Shown piece by piece: positions 13,915 to 63,800 of a stretch of DNA of 64,000 nucleotides. Source of the DNA: Podarcis cretensis. Lineage: Eukaryota. The first letter of the stretch is position 1. Each line of letters begins with the position of its first letter. Made by a program: the position numbers and the translations under genes. The stretch is taken from contig OX638149.1 in the NCBI GenBank assembly GCA_951804945.1, forward strand, positions 60,884,001 through 60,948,000, read 5' to 3'. Below the pieces are notes generated by a model. The model was not told the DNA's origin. It ran no database searches and was given only the letters and a program-made list of their open reading frames with translations.

Positions 13915-15376
13915 AATCATAGAATAGAGTCATAGAATCATAGAGTTGGAAGAGACCACAAGGGCCATCGAGTCCAACCCCCTGCCAAGCAGGAAACACC
14001 ATCAGAGCACTCCTGACATATGGTTGTCAAGCCTCTGCTTAAAGACCTCCAAAGAAGGAGACTCCACCACACTCCTTGGCAGCAAATTCCACTGTCGAAC
14101 AGCTCTTACTGTCAGGAAGTTCTTCCTAATGTTTAGGTGGAATCTTCTTTCTTGTAGTTTGGAGCCATTACTCCGTGTCCGCTTCTCTGGAGCAGCAGAA
14201 AACAACCTTTCTCCCTCCTCTATGTGACATCCTTTTATATATTTGAACATGGCTATCATATCACCCCTTAACCTCCTCTTCTCCAGGCTAAACATACCCA
14301 GCTCCCTTAGCCGTTCCTCATAAGGCATCGTTTCCAGGCCTTTGACCATTTTGGTTGCCCTCCTCTGGACACGTTCCAGTTTGTCAGTGTCCTTCTTGAA
14401 CTGTGGTGCCCAGAACTGGACACAGTACTCCAGGTGAGGTCTGACCAGAGCAGAATACAGTGGCACTATTACTTCCCTTGATCTAGATGCTATACTCCTA
14501 TTGATGCAGCCCAGAATTGCATTGGCTTTTTTAGCAGCCGCGTCACACTGTTGGCTCATGTCAAGTTTGTGGTCAACCAAGACTCCTAGATCATTTTCAC
14601 ATGTACTGCTCTCAAGCCAGGTGTCACCCATCTTGTATTTGTGCCTCTCATTTTTTTTGCCCAAGTGCAATGCTTTACATTTCTCCCTGTTAAAATTCAT
14701 CTTGTTTATTTTGGCCCAGTTCTCTAATCTGTCAAGGTTGTTTTGAAGTGTGATCCTGTCCTCTGGGGTGTTAGCCACCCCTCCCAGTTTGGTGTCATCT
14801 GCAAATTTGATCAGGATGCCCTTGAGTCCATCATCCAAGTCGTTGATAAAGATGTTGAATAAGACCAGGCCCAAGACAGAACCCTGTGGCACCCCACTAG
14901 TCACTCTTCTCCAGGATGAAGAGGAACCATTGATGAGCACCCTTTGGGTTCGGTCAGTCAGCCAGTTACAAATCCACTGAGTGGTAGCATAGTCAAGACC
15001 GCATTTTACCAGCTTCTTTACAAGAATATCATGGGGCACCTTGTCAAATGCCTTGCTGAAATCAAGGTAGGCTACATCCACTGCGTTCCCTTCATCTACC
15101 AGTCTTGTAATTCTGTCAAAAAACGAGATCAGGTTAGTCTGACATGACTTATTTTTCAGAAATCCATGCTGACTATTGGTGATCACAGTATTCTTTTCTA
15201 GGTGCTCACAGACTGTTTGCTTAATGATCTGCTCCAGAATCTTCCCTGGTATTGATGTCAGACTGACTGGGCAGTAATTATTTGGGTCCTCTCTTTCCCC
15301 CTTTTTGAAAATAGGGACAACATTTGCCCTCCTCCAGTCTGCCGGGACTTCGCCTGTTCTCCAGGAATTCTCAAAG
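13915..15376 (-). mobile_element. CR1 LINE, 5'-truncated, young copy with open RT frame and (TTCTATGA)-like 3' tail
   Basis: ORF 14002-15375 encodes [14 protein letters not shown]...[11 protein letters not shown]...[10 protein letters not shown]...[10 protein letters not shown]...[11 protein letters not shown]...WNLLP with no stops. Tail gaatcatag repeats at 13915-13943. Confidence 0.97.
14002..15375 (-). pseudogene. CR1 ORF2 C-terminal part (reverse transcriptase), lacking the endonuclease and a native start
   Basis: RT motifs are present. The first ~30 aa of the track ORF (15376-15468) come from unrelated flanking sequence. Confidence 0.9.
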
Positions 15377-15539
15377 GGATGGGAGGATACAAAGATTATG
15401 TCTAGGTTCACCACGGCTGCCATTGGGTCACCATCCAGAGGTTGACCAGATGCACAATTCCATCTCATCCAGGGAAGGGAATGCTACCAGTTGATGGAAA
15501 CCACAGGAGGGGAAAGTGCTCTTGTGCTCGAATCCTGCT

Positions 15540-18231: not shown

Positions 18232-18364
18232 CAGGCACGGGCAAACTTGGCCCTCCAGATGTTTTGAGACAATTCCCATCATCCCTAAACACTGGTCCTG
18301 TTAGCTAGGGATGATGGGAGTTGTAGTCCCAAAACACCTGGAGGGCCGAGTTTGCCTATGCCTG
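18232..18364. mobile_element. Palindromic hAT MITE with a perfect 8-bp TSD
   Basis: caggcacgggcaaacttggccctccagatgtttt...aaaacacctggagggccgagtttgcctatgcctg, with TCTTAGGC at 18224-18231 and 18365-18372. Confidence 0.9.
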
Positions 18365-18945
18365 TCTTAGGCAGTCAATGACCAGAACCTTATTCATGAG
18401 TTACTCATGTGTAGGGCCTTGCTATGTTGACAGAGAAACAGGGCTGCAATTTTAGGCCCCCCAATATGTCACTACACCTTTCTGTAAGAAATGGATGTTG
18501 CTCTTGGTGGTCTGCAAAGAATATCCAGCAGGCTCTGCATCATGGCAGCATCCATGCAGTGGACATCTGTGGATGCATACTGGCAACATCTATCAAATAT
18601 ATAGATGATAAAGCTCTGCATGCAGAAAATCCCAGATCTTAGCACCGGCATATCAAAGGATCTAACAGCAAAATCCTAACCATGTCTACTCAGAAAGGAG
18701 CCTTGTTGAATTCAATGTATCAGTTTTCCAGAGATTGATATTTTAGTTTTAGTTAGCAGAACTGGGCAAGACCTTTGCCCTAAAGACTTGGGGAGCCATT
18801 GCAGGTCAGAATAAGCAGTCCTGGGCTGGATGGACCAATGGTTTAACTCAGACCAAGATCACTTCATTGGTATTGTACCACTTAGTCAACTTCTGAATCC
18901 CTGCAAATGAGGAAGGAAAAGAAGTATATACAGCAAGCCAAGCCA

Positions 18946-18951
18946 TTTATT
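18946..18951 (-). terminator. Candidate SMIM38 poly(A) signal AATAAA
   Basis: tttatt on the plus strand about 600 nt past the stop, with U/GU-rich sequence downstream on the minus strand. Confidence 0.35.
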
Positions 18952-19556
18952 CACAGTCACTATTGAGGTTCATTTTAATTAAACAGTTTTCGAGTGGCAT
19001 GTCTTCAAAGCCCAGATCCATTTAGAATGTTGAGATCTAAACAATCACTTCCAAACATGTCCATCTTGTTTTTTTAGAAGCAACTATTTACATCAGTGCT
19101 TCAGAGGGATGCTGATCATCCTGATTCAAGTTGGTATGGGTGAGTCTTTGCATATAGGCAGCTGTTGTAGACTCAGGCAGCAGGTCAGCAACTTGTGCAA
19201 CAGGAAGGAAGTCATCTCACTTTGTCAAGACAGTGGAATTGTCCAATTGGCTGCCTGGATTCAATAAGATTGCATTCAGCCTATCCAAATACTTAGGAGG
19301 CAAATGGCTACAGGTCTGTTCCAGCAACAACTTCATGAACACCAGTTGACTGGACTACTTTGCAATTCACGGCTTATTATAATCTAGGCCTATTTAAACA
19401 AATGGACCCTAAACTCAGTTGACCCTATGAAGAAAAGAATCATTAACTAGCCCCTTTGAAAAGTTTTTTAAAAAAAAAAAAAAAAAAAGAGTGTCCTGTT
19501 CTATGACATTGTCCAGTAAGGCACCATTTGTTCATTGAAAATGCATATGAGCTCTT

Positions 19557-19688
19557 TCAAGAGTCCTTCCTCTTTTCAGGAAACCTACGGGACAGTTTGT
19601 AATCTAAATAAGCGCTGAAACAGGACCATAAAATGAATCGCGTTAATATAATTACAACCACTAAAATCATCAAAGGGCCTGATCCCAT
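19557..19688 (-). CDS. SMIM38: Small integral membrane protein 38 ortholog, 43 aa: MGSGPLMILVVVIILTRFILWSCFSAYLDYKLSRRFPEKRKDS*
   Basis: ATG at 19688 in strong context (A at -3, G at +4), TGA at 19559-19557. One hydrophobic helix plus a basic tail. The motif R-x-ILWSC-x3-Y(L/I)DY(K/R)L matches recalled human SMIM38, and the position downstream of and co-oriented with TPCN2 matches human synteny. Confidence 0.9.
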   Translation of the reverse strand: MGSGPLMILVVVIILTRFILWSCFSAYLDYKLSRRFPEKRKDS

Positions 19689-19695
19689 ATTTAAG

Positions 19696-19730
19696 CTATA
19701 ATAATGAGGTAACGGGGTAGGGGGAGGGAT
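19696..19730 (-). promoter_or_regulatory. Probable 3' splice site just upstream of the SMIM38 start codon
   Basis: Minus strand: atccctccccctaccccgttacctcattattatag|cttaaatATG, a pyrimidine-rich tract with AG 7 nt before the ATG. Confidence 0.5.
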
Positions 19731-20033
19731 ACTAATCCTACTACTATCACTGCTCTGGGAGATCTAATTATATAATGTCGTATTCAGGGCTGTGTGGCGG
19801 ATGGAGCCATTCCTGTAACATTCCAATCAAAGTGATCTCACTAGCATGTGAAGGAAGAGTCCAGCTGACAGATTTGGGACATGTACTATTTAGTCAAGAG
19901 GCCCCATGTACTATTCATAAAGAATTAACAACTCTTATATTGACAATGACATTATTGTCAGAAGGTCTTTGGAAGGGGAAGAAGGGGGGGGGAGCCTCCA
20001 TAAACTCTCTCTCACACACCCTGTGAAGTTAGA

Positions 20034-20036
<3 letters not shown>

Positions 20037-20082
<46 letters not shown>
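20037..20082. repeat. (CT)n microsatellite upstream of SMIM38
   Basis: Read directly. Confidence 0.97.
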
Positions 20083-20084
<2 letters not shown>

Positions 20085-21043
20085 GCCTCTTTTTTCCCAA
20101 TGCTGATGTAATCTCCAAACATCTCCAACAGCAGCTGCTTAGCGAAACCGGGCACCTTCTCCCTAGTCTTTTTCAGAAGCACACGCGGCACTTTCCAGTC
20201 CCCTCAAGACAATTGGGGCCTTTCTTTTGCCAATTAGCTATCACTTCAAGAGCCCCCGCGCTGTCCAACGGGCTCTTTGCAGGAAACAACACTGGAGGGG
20301 CTTTTTCTTTTCCTTTCCTAGACAAATTAAAAAGGAAAAAGGAGGGAGGGAGAAGAAGGGGGAAAGCAAATCAGAGCACAGAAACTTCCCAAAATGCATT
20401 GCTCATCAATTAGTCCAGGGCCGCATGCAAAAGCACCCATGAGAGTCAATCTCATAGCGAGGAAGAAGGCGGCCGGTGGTGGTGTGGTGGGGAGGGAAAT
20501 GCTCACTTTCTCTTTGGGAGACTGTTTCGGTCAGTATGTTAAGCAGATGTGACAGAAAAGACTGTTTGTTATAGCAAAGCTCAGAGTTACAAAAACTGTA
20601 CAAGAAAAGGAGTTCTTGGAAGGCTGGTCTTTGCTTCTCTGTGTTAGGGGCATTGTTATTTGTAGCAAAGTGAAATAGGAAAACGAAGCTTTGTGGGGCT
20701 TGATTTTGCTAACTATTGGTGAAGATAAATAGGAGGGGGACTTTGCAAAAGCCCTACTGTAGACCAGTGCAAATGAGACTCAGCTACTGTGCTTTCAAGA
20801 AAATAAAACAGGTTGGGTTCATGGGAAACTAGATATTGAGGCAGAGGCAGACTGAACCGTAGTTATTGCCTTAGTTGGTCTGCCATGGTAGGGTATGATA
20901 CAGCTACTTGGCCCATTGAAGTTTCAATTCCTTGAAAGCAATGGAGCTGAGGGATACGACTTTGGTTTATTGTAGTCCTCTACTCCAAACAAGGTGCCTT
21001 TTGGTCCCTGTCAGGACCAAAGGTCACTAGTTACCTAACTCTG

Positions 21044-21047
<4 letters not shown>

Positions 21048-21084
<37 letters not shown>
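21048..21084. repeat. (TA)n microsatellite
   Basis: Read directly. Confidence 0.97.
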
Positions 21085-21086
<2 letters not shown>

Positions 21087-24000
21087 TTATAAAAATTGCC
21101 CTTACATCAGGGATGGAGAACCTTCAGAAGTTGCAGGAGTGCAATTGCTGTCAGCTTTGATCATTGGCCATGCTGACTGGAGACTCTGCTCGCTGGGACT
21201 GATGGGAGTCCAATGGCTTACCTTGAGGGATACAGGTTTCTCATCCCTGCATTAAAACATATGGTTGGAGTAAATCTTTTCTTCACATATTGACCAAACT
21301 CATAACCAAACTCATAAACTGAGGTCAAGTCGGCTGGGCCTGTTGTTTACACTGTCATTTTGACAGGTTCAGATATCATCAGCTAAAGACTGAGCATTTT
21401 AACTGGAGCCCCAAGCCATGAAACCTCCCAGGCCCGTGTAGAGCTTGTCTGAGGACCAGTACAGGGGTCTTGTTTTAATAAAGTTATAAACGCAAACAAA
21501 AAAGCAGAGGGTCTCTGATGGGACCCCCTGGCCAGCTTAACCCTCCAAGGCCTGGGGCAAGTGTACCCAGCTGCCCGTCCCGTCCCATTCTCGCCCCCCG
21601 CACAGGCCTGGAGCTTCTCAAGAGGTAAGGAAGATTCATCTCCACTGCCCTTTCACATGGGTTGTAAATCCTCTCAGTTTCATCAAGGTTTCCAAAGAAG
21701 TTGTATTCATTTTGGTGTTTCGTTTCATATGCAATATGTACTGGTTTCAAATAATGTTTTGGTCTTGGCAATTTTGGGTGGTTGTAACTGCTTTGAGTTT
21801 AAGAAGCATGGGATCAAATTATAAATAAATCATATTTATTTACATATACAATTTTATTACTCAGATCTCTACAATAAAGTTTCAGAATGATGTAACATAC
21901 AAGAAAAAAAGTCAATACATATTACAATTTTATGGAAGTACAATAATCTATAGCCACCAGTCCAGTACTAGTCACACTTTAGCAGTACTTAGAAAACTCA
22001 TTTATAAAAGGTTCTAATTCATCCTGTCCCAAAAGGAACTAGTTCAAGTTAAAGCTCGTACTTTTATAAAACAAACTAGTTTGGTTCAAGTTCATCCAAA
22101 TGGACTTTTTAGTTCATGAAAGACTAATTCTTTGGAGGTGGGAAATCAGCATTCAGAATATGATACACTGAAGTATAGGGTCCAAAAGTAAATCAGGGGC
22201 TACACACAAGTAATAAGATGTCTAAAAGACAGAATTGTCTTTCCCCATAATTTTATTTCTATCTTGGAAAAGGCTTACCTGTTTAATTTCTGCCTGCTAC
22301 ACAGCAGGCACAAGACAGCGTTCACTTTGTTATTTTACCTGTACTTCACACTGCAAGCTTCCCCTGTTGGAAGAAAATGAATCTCTTCAGCAGAGAAGAT
22401 ACTGGAAATGCCTCATATTCCTTCTTTCTTTGCTTAGCAACAGTGATTTTGGTGACTGAGTGACCATAGCAACAGCAATACCTCCATATCTGCCTAATAA
22501 GACACATAATGTTGCCTCCATGTTTTGTTTTCTAACTTTCAACTGACACTTAAAAAAATATATATGAAAGCTTCCAGGCCTCCTACTGGAGGCAAGGGGT
22601 GGAAAAGGGGAATGAACATGAAGATTAACTAGAAACCATTCAAAGTTCCACCCCAAAATAATCCTTAATTCATCTTTAACTCATCCAGCAATAATGGGAA
22701 CTATTTTCAGGTGTAGTTCAGAGATTTTTGAACTAGTTCAGTGAACTTCATTAAACCAAACAGGTTTATTCCAACCGCTGCACTTTAGTCTATATCTAAC
22801 CCAGAATGAGGGTACTTAAGCCAACAGAGTTATGCAAACTTAATTCTGGGTTCGATTTAAGCCTCTGTTTTGTGTGGCTAGTGGCCCAGTTGAGGGGAAG
22901 GGGATCCCTAGATGCAATAAACACAACAAACACATTGTGCTTAATGGGGATCAGATGAGAATTGTATTAGTTCTCTATTTCTGTGTCAGGATAAATTCTT
23001 CTTATAACATATCAGTGTTGACCTCATTATTCACAATTATCCTGGGGGACGGATTATAACAGGTAGCGTTTTACAGTAATGGATCAAGTTACTTTTCTGG
23101 GGGGGGGTATATTCTATGGCTTTTGCACCACAGTCCCATGCATGTCTACGCAGAAGAAAATCTCATTAAGTACAATGGATTTCCTCCCAAGTGTATAGGG
23201 TTGCAACCTTAATGTCCAGCATTGACTTTTGCCTCACACCTCCCTCTTCTGGAATTGAAGATCCTTCCTCTGCTTCACCATAAGAAAGAAATATTCCCAA
23301 TATACTATGGTAATTTTAGCTCCGTGTATGAGATGGGAAATGCACACACTGGGAGATTCATGGGATGGGAAGCCCCATGCTGTACATCTTTGTCCAGATC
23401 CAGTAAGGCAGATCCGCGTGCACAGCTGATTTGAATGTGTATCTTCATCTGGATGGACTGTGAACATTATTATGCTTATCCTATCGAACTGGCTGAGTGC
23501 ATCTTTTGATGCAAATGGGGCTGCATGTCGCCCCCATTCCAGACCACCAGTTGTTATGTATAACTAGATCTCCTTGACTACAATGGGACTGTGGTCAATG
23601 TATGTCGTATACACCTCTGTGAAAAATGGTGATATACTCATAACTAATATATTGTCATAGTATCTTGATTATATGCTTTTTTTAAAAAAAATAACAACCA
23701 GATTCAGTATTTTTGATCTTCATGACCTTGCATTCAGGAGGAAGATACTTGAACAACTAATCAGAAAAATAATAATTACATTTTAGGTGGCCTTCAATTT
23801 GCAAACAAAAATTACTGACATTCAATATCAACAGTAAACAAGGATTATGTTCGGTATCAACTGCAATAGGTTCTAGTCCGTAAAATTGTGTGTGTGTGTG
23901 TGTTACAAATTTATTTTCCTTCTTTGTATTGAAATACTTACATTCTGCCTTTCCGCCTCATTTAAATTACCTTCAGGGTGCTTACAGCTCATAAGAAAAT

Positions 24001-25639
24001 GACAATTAAAACATCCTAACCATCACCACAAGCTAACCACTATAGGAAATAAATAACGTATGAAGATGGTGAAAATTATATCTTAACACAAAATTAAAAG
24101 AATAAGGAAATAGGATACTTAACTTACTCTTATTAGTCTCATATTCAGAGAGGGTGGAAAAGGCAGCAACACAAACCTAGCAAGGGCCTTTTGACTAATA
24201 CAGAGGTCTCGAAGTTTTCTTTTAAAGATTTTTTAAATTAAAAAAACCCAGAGATCACCAGTGCTTATCCCTTAGCATCACAGGTTTCCTACATTTATCA
24301 GACTGGAAAGGTAAAGGCATCTCTTTTCAATGTATTTACCTAAGGTCCCACAATTCCCTGTACAATGAAGTGAAAACAATACAGCCTTTTAGAGGAGTCC
24401 TGTTAAAAGCCAAATCAAGGAGTTTTATCTTTAAAGGGCTAAATCTGAAATGTTGACAAAGTAAACAACTGTTTCAAGACCTTGTGATTGTATGCATGCT
24501 CCAAGTTCTTTCAATGTTACATTGTGCCGAGAAGGACACAAACCACATGCCTCTTACTTACTCTTCGGCAACGAAAAATGTCACAAAAGTACTGAGAGAA
24601 CAGGGAAGCATTGATAGAAACTAGAGGAGAAACTATGCAAGAGTAGCTTCCCCCTCAACCTCAGATTAAAAAAAAGAGTTCATTTTAATATCGTCCTTGC
24701 ATTTTAATCAAATTTGCATCATATTGTGTGGGATGCTGATCAAACCTGTGACATCAATTCTGAGCTGGTGTGGTGGCAAGGACTGTTCAGTTGCTTCAGG
24801 AGTGCATCAGCCTTCATTCCATTTATTTCTGTGAAGGAAGGGAATGCTGTCAAGATGGCTGGGATTAAAGTCCCCCAGTGAGGGAGGCTGAGGACTGAGA
24901 GGTGGTCCCGGGATGTAGCAAAGCTAAGGGACAGGAAACCTAGAATTAAGAAGGTTGAAGGGAAATTACAGAGCAGGCAAAGGACTTAGAGGGACATGAA
25001 GGAATAGTAGCTTGCTTGAGAGAAAAGACAGCAGGGACTGGAAATGAAAAATGGGACTAATCAGAGAAGGAGTCACAGCATTCAGTTTCAAAGCATTTAA
25101 GGTTGAGGGAGCTATATGCTTTGATGGGAAAAGAAAAGCATACTAGGAAGGCTGGTCAAGATATAGAGTGACTAATTGCTACATCCAGACTATGCCAAGG
25201 GATTCTTCTTGTTGTGGGTTGGCCAGTATAACTGTCAAAAAGCAGGGGGGCGGGAAGGCAAATATTATTTGAACTAATCAGCCAATTATCTCACAGTAGA
25301 CGTCTAGCACTTACTTGACTATGGAATAAAACATTTTAATAGAATGCCCAGGTGCCATGTACTAGAATTCCAAAAACTAATTTGGAACCGGTTCTGAGTT
25401 TGAAGAGGTATTTTAATAGGCCTCAGACCCAGAGTTGGTTTTCAACATGACAGGCACCAGAAGGTAGTCCACCTGGCTGTTGGCCCATAAAGGTAGGAGT
25501 GGTGACAGAGGAGAAGAGACCTCAGATGCAGCTCTTTGCCCTCATACCTACAGGGTGAAAAGGGGAGTATTGAAAGGGGGAGGAGGAAGGGGAAACAATT
25601 TTGGGAAGGGAACAATTTGGGAGTCAAAATGGGAAAGGG

Positions 25640-54138: not shown

Positions 54139-54282
54139 GCTGGGATAGCTCAGTCGATAGAGCATGAGACTCTTAATCACAACGTCATAGGTTTGAGCCC
54201 CATGTTGGGCAAAAGATTCCTGCAGGGGGCTGGACTAGATGACCCTTGTGGTCCCTTCCAACAGTTCTATGATTCTACGATT
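54139..54282 (+). mobile_element. tRNA-Lys(CTT)-derived SINE with a CR1 3' tail
   Basis: 54139-54211 aligns by eye to tRNA-Lys-CTT (tagctcagtc..tagagcatgagactcttaatc...gagccccatgttgggc) with stem-breaking mismatches, directly followed by ggactagatgacc...ttctatgattcta. Confidence 0.85.
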
Positions 54283-63149: not shown

Positions 63150-63670
63150 ATTGTATTTGGGTGTCAAGTCATTTAAGGCTTTGTACACTGGTTCTAACAC
63201 TTTGGGCCTAGTAGTTCATGTGAAGGCAATGCAGTTCCCTGAGGAAGGGGGTGGTATATTTCTTACCATATCGTACAGCAAGTGGGCAGCAGTGTTCTGC
63301 ACTAACTGCAGCTTCAGGGCCATCTTCAATAGTAGTCCCATGTAGAGGGAATGGCAGTAATCCATCCAGGAACATGGGTCACTGAGGCCCACTAAGGCCT
63401 CTTGGTCTAGAAATAACCACAGCCAGTGAACCAGCTTTATCTGGGTATATGTGACATTCCTTGCTTAGAATTGAGGAGCAGCCCTAAGCTACATATCTGC
63501 TTTCTCAGGTGATTTGTTACCCTGTCCAGAACAATGGGCAGGGTAACAAATCACCTGAGCTCTAAGGACCAACAGGGCCTCCTTCTTGTCAGGCTCCAGT
63601 TTCAGTTTACTGACCCTCACCCAGCCTGTTGCTGCCTTCGGACACCGGTTCAGCAACTGAACAGCCCTTT
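63150..63670 (-). mobile_element. Old L2 RT remnant inside a TPCN2 intron
   Basis: Minus strand near 63640-63660 reads CADDAQL, a decayed YADDTQL. The flanks gcagtaatcc and ctgcactaactgcagctt are typical of L2 ORF2. Confidence 0.65.
63504..63559. repeat. 25-bp inverted repeat with a 6-nt loop
   Basis: ctcaggtgatttgttaccctgtcca-gaacaa-tgggcagggtaacaaatcacctgag, one mismatch. Confidence 0.95.
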
Positions 63671-63800
63671 CTGATTCAGGTGGAATGGAGAGAAAGAGCT
63701 GGGCGTCATCCGCACACGGACAACATTGTGTTCCAAATACTGCCTGTACGATAGCATAGCTTGCCTATTCCATTTATCCATCAGAGGGTTTGCTACTTCA

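What the first reader, a model, noticed from the sequence alone, without database searches (positions are those of the whole stretch)
19557..19688. Hidden 43-aa transmembrane microprotein (SMIM38 ortholog) below the ORF-track cutoff
Seen: an intact minus-strand sORF with strong Kozak context, a probable splice acceptor 7 nt upstream, a ~20-residue hydrophobic helix with an intramembrane Arg (ILTRFILWSCFSAY) and a basic tail. Recalled knowledge: human SMIM38 lies downstream of TPCN2, carries RLILWSC...YIDYRL, and is essentially uncharacterised. Inference: retention of both sequence and synteny between a lizard and mammals points to a real, selected amniote micropeptide that automated reptile annotation could easily miss.
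Basis: partly seen in the sequence, partly recalled or inferred. Interest (0 to 1): 0.8.

Follow-up and report, generated by a model that had tools for sequence, protein, structure and literature searches.

The report
Lizard SMIM38 microprotein gene, already annotated
The 43-codon reading frame is the lizard copy of SMIM38, a tiny single-pass membrane protein conserved from coelacanth to mammals; this exact peptide is already in NCBI's protein database, so the gene is real and of unknown function but not hidden or new.

Summary
Window 19557-19688 (minus strand) is an intact 43-codon ORF with A at -3 and G at +4 of the ATG. An AG preceded by a pyrimidine-rich tract lies 7 nt upstream. The peptide has a hydrophobic helix with an internal Arg and a basic tail.

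The ORF alone is no better than chance: the window holds 228 ATG ORFs of 43 aa or more. Homology makes it real. It is 98% identical to Tiliqua scincoides SMIM38 (E 1e-20). A profile search found 47 proteins, 46 of them named SMIM38 (or SMIM38-like) by NCBI and one unnamed, from lizards, snakes, turtles, alligator, birds, frogs, a newt, marsupials, placentals and coelacanth. No other family was hit.

So the SMIM38 reading is right, but three parts of the interpretation fail or stay open:
- "Amniote" is too narrow.
- "Hidden" is wrong: the exact peptide is already in NCBI nr and the ESM Atlas.

RNA evidence is inconclusive. No read or contig was laid on the ORF. One short contig from a close relative shows a minus-strand GT-AG junction (20019..18901) that skips the ORF.

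The most likely mechanism is inferred only: an N-out/C-in membrane micropeptide with an invariant Arg17 and a dilysine-like C-terminus (K at -3 in 45 of 48), suggesting COPI retrieval to the ER or early Golgi.

Already known; low interest.

The parts
19557..19688 (-). SMIM38 coding sequence: 43 codons plus a TGA stop, all in one exon
   Evidence: ORF and translation. (98% identity to Tiliqua scincoides SMIM38; 47 family members found). (the exact peptide is already in NCBI nr).
19683..19691 (-). Start codon context AAATATGGG, with A at -3 and G at +4
   Evidence: Read directly from the sequence. The L-N codons just upstream of the Met also appear in the N-terminally extended models of coelacanth, geckos, birds and marsupials, so these bases are conserved.
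19696..19722 (-). Predicted splice acceptor: a pyrimidine-rich tract plus AG at 19697-19696, so the exon would start at 19695
   Evidence: Sequence only: 76% pyrimidines in the 25 nt upstream of the AG. It is not verified, because no read or contig was laid on it. Read in frame, the window gives ..LPHYYSLN, which resembles bird models reading ..LPHYSSLN.
19617..19673 (-). Codons for the predicted transmembrane helix core, residues 6-24 (LMILVVVIILTRFILWSCF)
   Evidence: Kyte-Doolittle mean 2.57. The simple sum on the Hessa scale is -2.16 kcal/mol despite the Arg. AlphaFold2 on the 48-sequence alignment gives one helix over residues 4-35, with pLDDT 96 for residues 11-20.
19638..19640 (-). Codon CGA for Arg17, which lies inside the hydrophobic stretch and is invariant in 48 of 48 sequences
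   Evidence: It starts the block R-F-I-L-W-S-C, where each position is conserved in 43 to 48 of 48 sequences.
19560..19574 (-). C-terminal KRKDS, which fits the KxKxx dilysine pattern at the extreme C-terminus
Evidence: K at -3 occurs in 45 of 48 orthologs. Canonical KKxx or KxKxx occurs in 31 of 48, against a mean of 5.6 in tail shuffles (not corrected for phylogeny).
18946..18979 (-). ATTAAA (18979-18974) and AATAAA (18951-18946), candidate poly(A) signals for a terminal exon of about 0.75 kb
   Evidence: Pattern scan. Predicted only.
18901..20019 (-). Minus-strand GT...AG intron seen as a junction in a contig from a closely related organism; it contains the whole SMIM38 ORF
   Evidence: an X1 contig covering 18872-18901 runs on into loose letters; the first 12 of those letters match the window only at 20021-20032; the boundaries read CAGG|GTGTGT and TTTGCAG|GG. 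One 58-letter contig at depth 4.3 from one run carries the junction; a second X1 contig ends exactly at 18901.

Best explanation
This is the single-exon coding sequence of the lizard SMIM38 gene, a 43-aa single-pass membrane micropeptide that is already annotated. That identity is shown here. How it works is inferred. The peptide is too short for ordinary co-translational targeting. It most likely inserts with its 5-residue N-terminus on the lumenal or outer side and its basic 19-residue tail in the cytosol, following the positive-inside rule. The functional core would be the cytosolic-leaflet half of the helix (invariant R17, L20, W21 and S22; near-invariant F18 and C23) together with the juxtamembrane segment Y-x-D-Y-K-L...R-x-P. 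The tail ends in a dilysine-type signal with K at -3 plus K or R at -4 or -5. This would be read by COPI and would keep the peptide cycling in the ER or early Golgi. There, the buried Arg17 would pair with a polar or acidic transmembrane residue of a partner protein, as in other small accessory subunits. My confidence is about 0.95 for identity, about 0.7 for the topology, about 0.35 for ER/Golgi retrieval, and lower for the partner idea.
For: Identity: it is 98% identical to Tiliqua scincoides SMIM38 and 85-93% identical to seven other reptile proteins named SMIM38. The profile search returned 47 proteins, 46 named SMIM38 or SMIM38-like and one unnamed, and no other family. The exact peptide is in NCBI nr, in the same 90% cluster as Zootoca vivipara XP_034972935.1. 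Selection: 33 of 48 sequences are exactly 43 aa. L6, R17, L20, W21, S22, D29, R35 and P37 are invariant, and 9 more positions are at least 90% conserved across lineages that diverged more than 300 million years ago. Helix and topology: one helix over residues 4-35; a hydrophobic core at residues 6-24; no charge N-terminal of it against +6/-3 C-terminal of it. C-terminal signal: K at -3 in 45 of 48. The motif switches between KxKxx (squamates, alligator, mammals) and KKxx (coelacanth, chicken, finches, Bufo) while the -3 Lys stays put. Human SMIM38 was reported as a PhyloCSF-discovered gene with proteomic support (PMC6886504).
Against: No transcription or translation evidence was obtained for this lizard. 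All four runs gave zero depth over 18992-20173, although the tool warns that such holes prove nothing. The one junction seen skips the ORF. Many birds have RKxx rather than a canonical dilysine. Two turtles and one frog lack K at -3. The shuffle control ignores relatedness. A basic tail could equally serve the positive-inside rule or lipid binding. Arg17 may snorkel to the interface rather than sit buried. No partner, localisation or phenotype is known: 11 papers in the library mention SMIM38, and the four read do so only in gene lists or as a newly annotated gene.
Confidence: 0.85

Rival explanations
1. It is the same SMIM38 protein, but it is not ER-retained. It would travel to the plasma membrane or endosomes and act as an accessory subunit of an epithelial ion transporter or channel, in the manner of FXYD or KCNE proteins. 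The basic tail would serve only topology or lipid binding.
For: In a human gene list, SMIM38 falls together with gastric acid-secretion genes (ATP4A, ATP4B, KCNE2, KCNJ16) (PMC11675858). In infected mouse colon, Smim38 falls together with Fxyd4 (PMC9871501). The dilysine pattern is not canonical in 17 of 48 orthologs.
Against: Co-listing in differential-expression tables is weak evidence. K at -3 is far better conserved (45 of 48) than the neighbouring basic positions 39 and 40, which a generic basic tail would not predict. The sequence shows no similarity to FXYD or KCNE families in Pfam.
Confidence: 0.3
2. In this lizard the locus mainly yields a spliced, largely non-coding minus-strand RNA in which the ORF is intronic. 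The peptide would be made rarely or only from an alternative terminal or cassette exon.
For: A GT-AG junction from 20020 to 18900 removes the ORF in a contig from a close relative. Further minus-strand junctions lie upstream at 22278|21245. No read was laid on the ORF.
Against: The junction rests on one 58-letter contig. The runs that hold it also held 50-59% of the sampled words of 18900-19700, which is almost entirely inside that 'intron'. That region is therefore present in them, and its absence from the laid table is a filter hole. Protein-level conservation over more than 300 million years requires translation.
Confidence: 0.1
3. It is a chance ORF or a decaying pseudogene copy.
For: ORFs of this size are common in the window: 228 of 43 aa or more.
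Against: It is intact, has the modal 43-aa length of the family and is 98% identical to a skink ortholog. Every invariant family residue is present.
Confidence: 0.01

Closest known systems
SMIM38 (small integral membrane protein 38), as annotated by NCBI in vertebrates. The human gene was added to GENCODE through PhyloCSF and has proteomic support (PMC6886504).
   Same: It matches over its full length, with the same 43-aa size as most non-placental orthologs. The R-F-I-L-W-S-C core, the D-Y-K-L..R-x-P segment and the basic C-terminus are the same. The exact peptide is already in NCBI nr.
   Different: Nothing essential differs. Placental proteins are 51 aa, with 8 extra N-terminal residues and Q, R or H in place of F36. 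Some gecko, bird and marsupial models carry N-terminal extensions that read through the region upstream of the ATG.
Dilysine (KKxx / KxKxx) COPI retrieval signals of ER-resident type I/III membrane proteins
   Same: The window peptide ends in K-R-K-D-S, which is KxKxx at the extreme C-terminus of a predicted cytosolic tail. K at -3 occurs in 45 of 48 orthologs.
   Different: The function is untested. Many birds carry RKxx, and a few species lack the motif. The resemblance is a sequence pattern, not a demonstrated signal.
Single-pass regulatory micropeptides and accessory subunits (FXYD proteins, KCNE proteins, and the phospholamban/sarcolipin/DWORF 'regulins')
   Same: The size class is the same: one transmembrane helix, with conservation concentrated in the helix and juxtamembrane segment. 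The likely mode of action is the same, by helix-helix contact with a larger membrane protein.
   Different: There is no detectable sequence relationship. SMIM38 has an invariant Arg inside the helix and lacks the FXYD motif. No partner is known. This says what it may work like, not that it is a member.
Pfam PF15086 UPF0542 (SMIM15 family)
   Same: There is a weak match over the helix and basic tail: E 0.018 for the window peptide, and 12 of 48 orthologs match with best E 0.0042.
   Different: The window peptide scores 15.3 bits against a cut-off of 27, and the best E-value among the 12 matching orthologs is only 0.0042. Other unrelated single-helix families match equally weakly. I read it as compositional similarity, not homology.

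Membership tests
SMIM38 | Significant full-length sequence similarity to proteins named SMIM38 | tested here: met
   8 hits with E 1e-20 to 1e-13, 85-98% identity and 91-100% coverage; 47 hits with E 4.5e-28 to 7.7e-14.
SMIM38 | No better or competing match to another family (the reciprocity criterion) | tested here: met
   Of the 47 hits, 46 are named SMIM38 or SMIM38-like and one ENA record is unnamed. No Pfam family reaches its cut-off for any of the 48 sequences. The Atlas feature search gave nothing above 0.84. A formal reverse search from a mammalian SMIM38 into this genome was not possible with these tools.
SMIM38 | Family architecture: about 43-51 aa, one transmembrane helix, conserved R-F-I-L-W-S-C and D-Y-(K/R)-L..R-x-P, and a basic C-terminus | tested here: met
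   all invariant residues are present in the window peptide; a single helix over residues 4-35; hydropathy and charge.
The 10 largest ORFs of the window hold only a reverse transcriptase. An ad hoc exon scan showed nothing channel-like by eye. PMC13718048 lists SMIM38 among shared target genes in a passage on loci that include 11q13, in human only.
SMIM38 | Transcribed and translated in this species | tested here: inconclusive
   One search gave zero depth on the ORF in 3 contig runs and 1 raw RNA run, of which about 12% was read. The tool's filters make such holes uninformative. One search shows runs guessed to be RNA holding 50-59% of the words of 18900-19700.
SMIM38 | Purifying selection at codon level (dN/dS well below 1) | not testable with these tools
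   No orthologous vertebrate DNA could be fetched. Only the protein-level argument is available: length and 17 positions are kept over more than 300 million years.
Dilysine COPI-retrieval signal (KKxx/KxKxx) | Lys at -3, plus Lys at -4 or -5, counted from the extreme C-terminus | tested here: met
   The window peptide ends in KRKDS, which is KxKxx. Canonical motifs occur in 31 of 48 orthologs and K at -3 in 45 of 48.
Dilysine COPI-retrieval signal (KKxx/KxKxx) | The C-terminus faces the cytosol and the protein resides in the ER or cis-Golgi in a Lys-dependent way | not testable with these tools
   The topology is inferred only from charge asymmetry (0 against +6/-3). No localisation data were found.
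Pfam PF15086 UPF0542 (SMIM15) | Score at or above the family's gathering threshold (27 bits) | tested here: not met
   15.3 bits for the window peptide. Only 12 of 48 orthologs match at all, with best E 0.0042.

The most novel reading that the evidence does not exclude
SMIM38 may be a COPI-retrieved micropeptide of the ER or early Golgi, with its N-terminus lumenal and its C-terminus cytosolic. Its invariant mid-helix Arg17 and the adjacent W-S-C face would dock onto a polar or acidic transmembrane residue of a client or partner, possibly an epithelial ion-transport protein. The family would date back at least to the sarcopterygian ancestor rather than to amniotes. In lizards, the coding exon may in addition be an alternative exon nested in an intron of a longer spliced minus-strand transcript.
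Probability: 0.25. Interest if true: 0.4.

Novelty: already known. Interest (0 to 1): 0.15.

Why it matters
It matters little as a discovery. The gene family has been named since 2016-2019. NCBI annotates it in dozens of vertebrates, and this exact lizard peptide is already in nr. The modest value lies in the comparative picture assembled here for an uncharacterised micropeptide. That picture includes a range reaching amphibians and coelacanth, eight invariant residues including an Arg inside the helix, and a Lys at -3 of the C-terminus in 45 of 48 sequences. Together these give a concrete, cheap hypothesis about where the peptide sits and what it touches, testable by localisation and mutagenesis.

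Tried and rejected
- **The look-up of encoding contigs.** I called it for gene context and ortholog DNA, which would have allowed synteny and dN/dS tests.
- **Reads.** I do not read this as silence, because the tool drops conserved or human-like records and skipped repeats at 19451-19499 and 20026-20090.
- **TPCN2 in the window.** Pfam on the ten largest ORFs found only RVT_1. A crude AG..GT plus composition exon scan produced nothing that looked like a channel exon. That scan is too weak to count as absence.
- **Remote family links.** Pfam on the peptide and on all 48 orthologs gave only sub-threshold single-helix noise, with UPF0542 best. The ESM Atlas feature search gave scores of 0.84 or less, which is within the range of shuffled controls. 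I rejected both as evidence of kinship.
- **Earlier scan notes.** Searches for TPCN2 and neighbouring genes found nothing.
- **Searches not run.** I did not run the costly all-representatives HMMER search or a third word search, because the identity was already settled. Whether ray-finned fishes or sharks have SMIM38 therefore stays open.
- **Sequences not built or fetched.** No human sequence was fetched or compared.

Full report
**What is in the sequence.** On the minus strand, 19688-19557 reads ATG, 42 further codons and TGA, giving MGSGPLMILVVVIILTRFILWSCFSAYLDYKLSRRFPEKRKDS.
- The start context is AAATATGG, with A at -3 and G at +4.
- An AG sits at 19697-19696, 7 nt before the ATG. The 25 nt upstream of it are 76% pyrimidine.
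- The string ILTRFILWSCFSAY is present, and the tail is basic.
- No in-frame ATG lies between the ORF's ATG and the next upstream stop at 19766. Spliced or not, the same 43-aa product is predicted.

An ORF of this size is not remarkable in itself. The window holds 228 ATG-started ORFs of 43 aa or more.

**Identity.** A word-indexed phmmer search of the peptide against 5.8 billion proteins returned eight hits. All are named 'small integral membrane protein 38' by NCBI. They run from Tiliqua scincoides (98% identity, E 1.2e-20) to the turtle Pelodiscus (85%).

A profile of those sequences (A1) then found 47 proteins. Of these, 46 are named SMIM38 or SMIM38-like and one ENA record is unnamed. They come from:
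- lizards and snakes (Anolis, Pogona, Varanus, Elgaria, Candoia, Crotalus and others);
- turtles, alligator and about 17 birds;
- eight frogs and toads, and a newt;
- marsupials and placentals (Mirounga, Lemur, Vicugna);
- the coelacanth.

No protein of any other name appeared. No Pfam family reaches its threshold for any of the 48 sequences. The weak UPF0542/SMIM15 match (15.3 bits against a cut-off of 27; 12 of 48 members) sits among equally weak matches to unrelated single-helix families. The criterion 'best hit is SMIM38' is therefore met, as far as a one-directional search can show.

**Is it hidden?** No. An exact look-up shows that this very 43-aa sequence is already in NCBI and NCBI nr. 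It is seen on three contigs, the longest 139 Mb. It belongs to the same 90% cluster as Euleptes europaea SMIM38 and Zootoca vivipara XP_034972935.1, which differs from it only at T16M. The ESM Atlas also holds it letter for letter. The literature agrees that the family is known. Mudge et al. 2019 (PMC6886504) list human SMIM38 among 70 genes newly found by PhyloCSF and note independent proteomic support (Ma et al. 2016). Eleven papers in the library mention SMIM38. The four I read do so only in gene lists or as a newly annotated gene, not as a functional study. So 'uncharacterised' looks right and 'overlooked' is not.

**Evidence of selection.** I could not obtain orthologous DNA, so no dN/dS or PhyloCSF score was computed. 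The protein-level evidence is nonetheless strong.
- 33 of the 48 sequences are exactly 43 aa.
- L6, R17, L20, W21, S22, D29, R35 and P37 are invariant.
- M1, L9, I13, L15, F18, C23, Y30, L32 and K41 are at least 90% conserved.
- This holds across lineages that separated more than 300 million years ago, a span at which neutral DNA is saturated.
- Changes in the N-terminal half of the helix are I/L/V/M exchanges. The block R17-C23 is almost frozen.
- The peptide is 72% identical to the coelacanth protein, so the family is at least sarcopterygian, not amniote-specific.

**Structure and topology (predicted).** AlphaFold2 on the 48-sequence alignment gives a single helix over residues 4-35. Mean pLDDT is 79.8, rising to 96 for residues 11-20. 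The most hydrophobic 19-mer is residues 6-24, with a Kyte-Doolittle mean of 2.57. Its simple Hessa-scale sum is -2.16 kcal/mol even with Arg17 included. The five residues before the helix carry no charge in this lizard and are acidic in most species. The residues after it carry six K/R and three D/E. By the positive-inside rule, the C-terminus should be cytosolic and the N-terminus lumenal or external. Only 19 residues follow the helix, so the protein would be released from the ribosome before the helix is fully exposed. Post-translational insertion is therefore likely; this is an inference from general knowledge of small membrane proteins and was not tested.

**The C-terminus.** An earlier first-stage note (s1-836681) pointed out that KRKDS fits KxKxx. 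I counted the pattern across the 48 orthologs.

| C-terminal pattern | Sequences (of 48) |
|---|---|
| KxKxx | 23 |
| KKxx | 8 |
| K at -3 with Arg at -4 or -5 | 12 |
| K at -3 only | 2 |
| none | 3 |

- K at -3 is present in 45 of 48 sequences, while the neighbouring positions 39 and 40 vary freely.
- Shuffling the last six residues gives a mean of 5.6 canonical motifs, with a maximum of 13 in 2000 shuffles. This control ignores relatedness and is not a probability.
- The motif changes form between lineages while the -3 Lys stays. That is what a functional dilysine signal predicts.
- The RKxx form in many birds and the absence in turtles argue for caution.

**RNA evidence.** The run search listed 14 small runs guessed to be RNA, holding 15-59% of the sampled words of 18900-19700. 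It also listed larger runs, probably DNA, and raw RNA runs of one species label. I laid three contig runs and one raw RNA run on 18401-24300. All gave zero depth from 18992 to 20173. The tool warns that it drops human-like or conserved records and that it skipped repeats at 19451-19499 and 20026-20090. X1 had held 59% of the words of that very stretch, so this hole says nothing about expression.

One positive result emerged. An X1 contig covering 18872-18901 continues into letters whose first 12 bases match the window only at 20021-20032. On the minus strand this is a junction between an exon ending at 20020 (CAGG|GTGTGT) and an exon starting at 18900 (TTTGCAG|GG). That is a canonical GT-AG intron of 1,119 nt, and it contains the entire ORF. 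A further minus-strand GT-AG junction joins 22279 to 21246, partly in repeat-like sequence.

A spliced minus-strand transcript therefore crosses the locus in a close relative, and at least one isoform skips the coding exon. This fits a model with two alternative 3' exons sharing the donor at 20020. The proximal exon would be the coding one, running from 19695 to about 18930, with ATTAAA and AATAAA at 18979-18946. The distal exon would start at 18900. The model rests on one 58-letter contig and is unproven. Indirect support for a conserved element there comes from the bases just upstream of the ATG. Read in frame they give ..LPHYYSLN in the window, which closely matches the N-terminal extensions of some bird models (..LPHYSSLN).

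**Surroundings.** The window looks gene-poor.
- The largest ORF (14002-15468, minus strand, 488 aa) is a reverse-transcriptase fragment (RVT_1, E 4e-30). Nine other large ORFs have no credible family.
- Rfam finds one weak tRNA-like match at 54139-54211 that ARAGORN does not confirm.
- CpG observed/expected rises to about 0.5 at 20000-20600, against 0.24 for the window as a whole. There is no clear CpG island.
- I found no sign of TPCN2 exons, but my means of looking were weak. Synteny is therefore untested.

**Mechanism, committed.**
- Shown: the gene is SMIM38, it is intact, and its product is conserved as a single-helix peptide.
- Inferred with fair confidence: N-out/C-in topology.
- Inferred with modest confidence (about 0.35): a C-terminal dilysine-type signal keeps it in the ER/early-Golgi cycle. 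There, the frozen R-F-I-L-W-S-C half-helix and the Y-x-D-Y-K-L..R-x-P juxtamembrane segment would bind a partner membrane protein, with Arg17 pairing with a polar or acidic residue in the partner's helix.
- Main rival: a post-Golgi accessory subunit of an epithelial transporter. This is hinted at only by co-listing with ATP4A, ATP4B and KCNE2 in a human table, and with Fxyd4 in a mouse colon table.

**Verdict.** The SMIM38 assignment is correct. The claims of novelty and of being missed by annotation are wrong.

Noticed in passing
window:14002-15468 (-): A 488-aa open reading frame encodes a reverse-transcriptase domain (Pfam RVT_1, E 4e-30). It is most likely a retroelement fragment about 4 kb downstream of SMIM38. 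A second RT-like stretch (..ADDAQLFLS..LEPDKKEALL..) lies at 63492-63764 (-).
   Followed up: partly
window:18901-20019 (-), and 21246-22279 (-): Contigs from close relatives show canonical minus-strand GT-AG junctions: 20020|18900, which skips the SMIM38 ORF, and 22279|21246, which lands in SINE-like sequence. This suggests a multi-exon transcript across the locus.
   Followed up: partly
window:54139-54211 (+): Rfam reports a tRNA match at 32.1 bits, just above the 29-bit threshold, but ARAGORN finds no tRNA in the window. It is probably a tRNA-derived SINE head or a degenerate copy.
   Followed up: partly
window:22360-24125: A contig from a related organism joins 22359 to 24126 with two other letters between. 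As aligned the ends are non-canonical. However, GTAAGT at 24127-24122 and an AG at 22365-22364 on the minus strand would also allow an intron here. An alternative is a 1.77-kb insertion in this genome.
   Followed up: no
window:18663-18695, 18260-18390, 21140-21250, 23140-23200: Pieces of repeat-like sequence recur in these stretches (..ctgagtagacatg.., ..ggactacaactcccatcatccc..). Reads from many other loci stop at their edges (18663-18695), which complicates any transcript model.
   Followed up: no
window:20026-20090 and 19468-19490: A long (GA)n microsatellite lies just upstream of the observed splice donor, and a T22 run lies in the presumed 3' UTR. The reads tool skipped both as repeats.
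   Followed up: no
protein cluster of P0048: A 631-aa JGI protein named 'glycyl-tRNA synthetase' (P0050) is filed in the same 90% cluster as the SMIM38 peptides but shows no alignment to them. This looks like a clustering artefact in the collection.
   Followed up: yes
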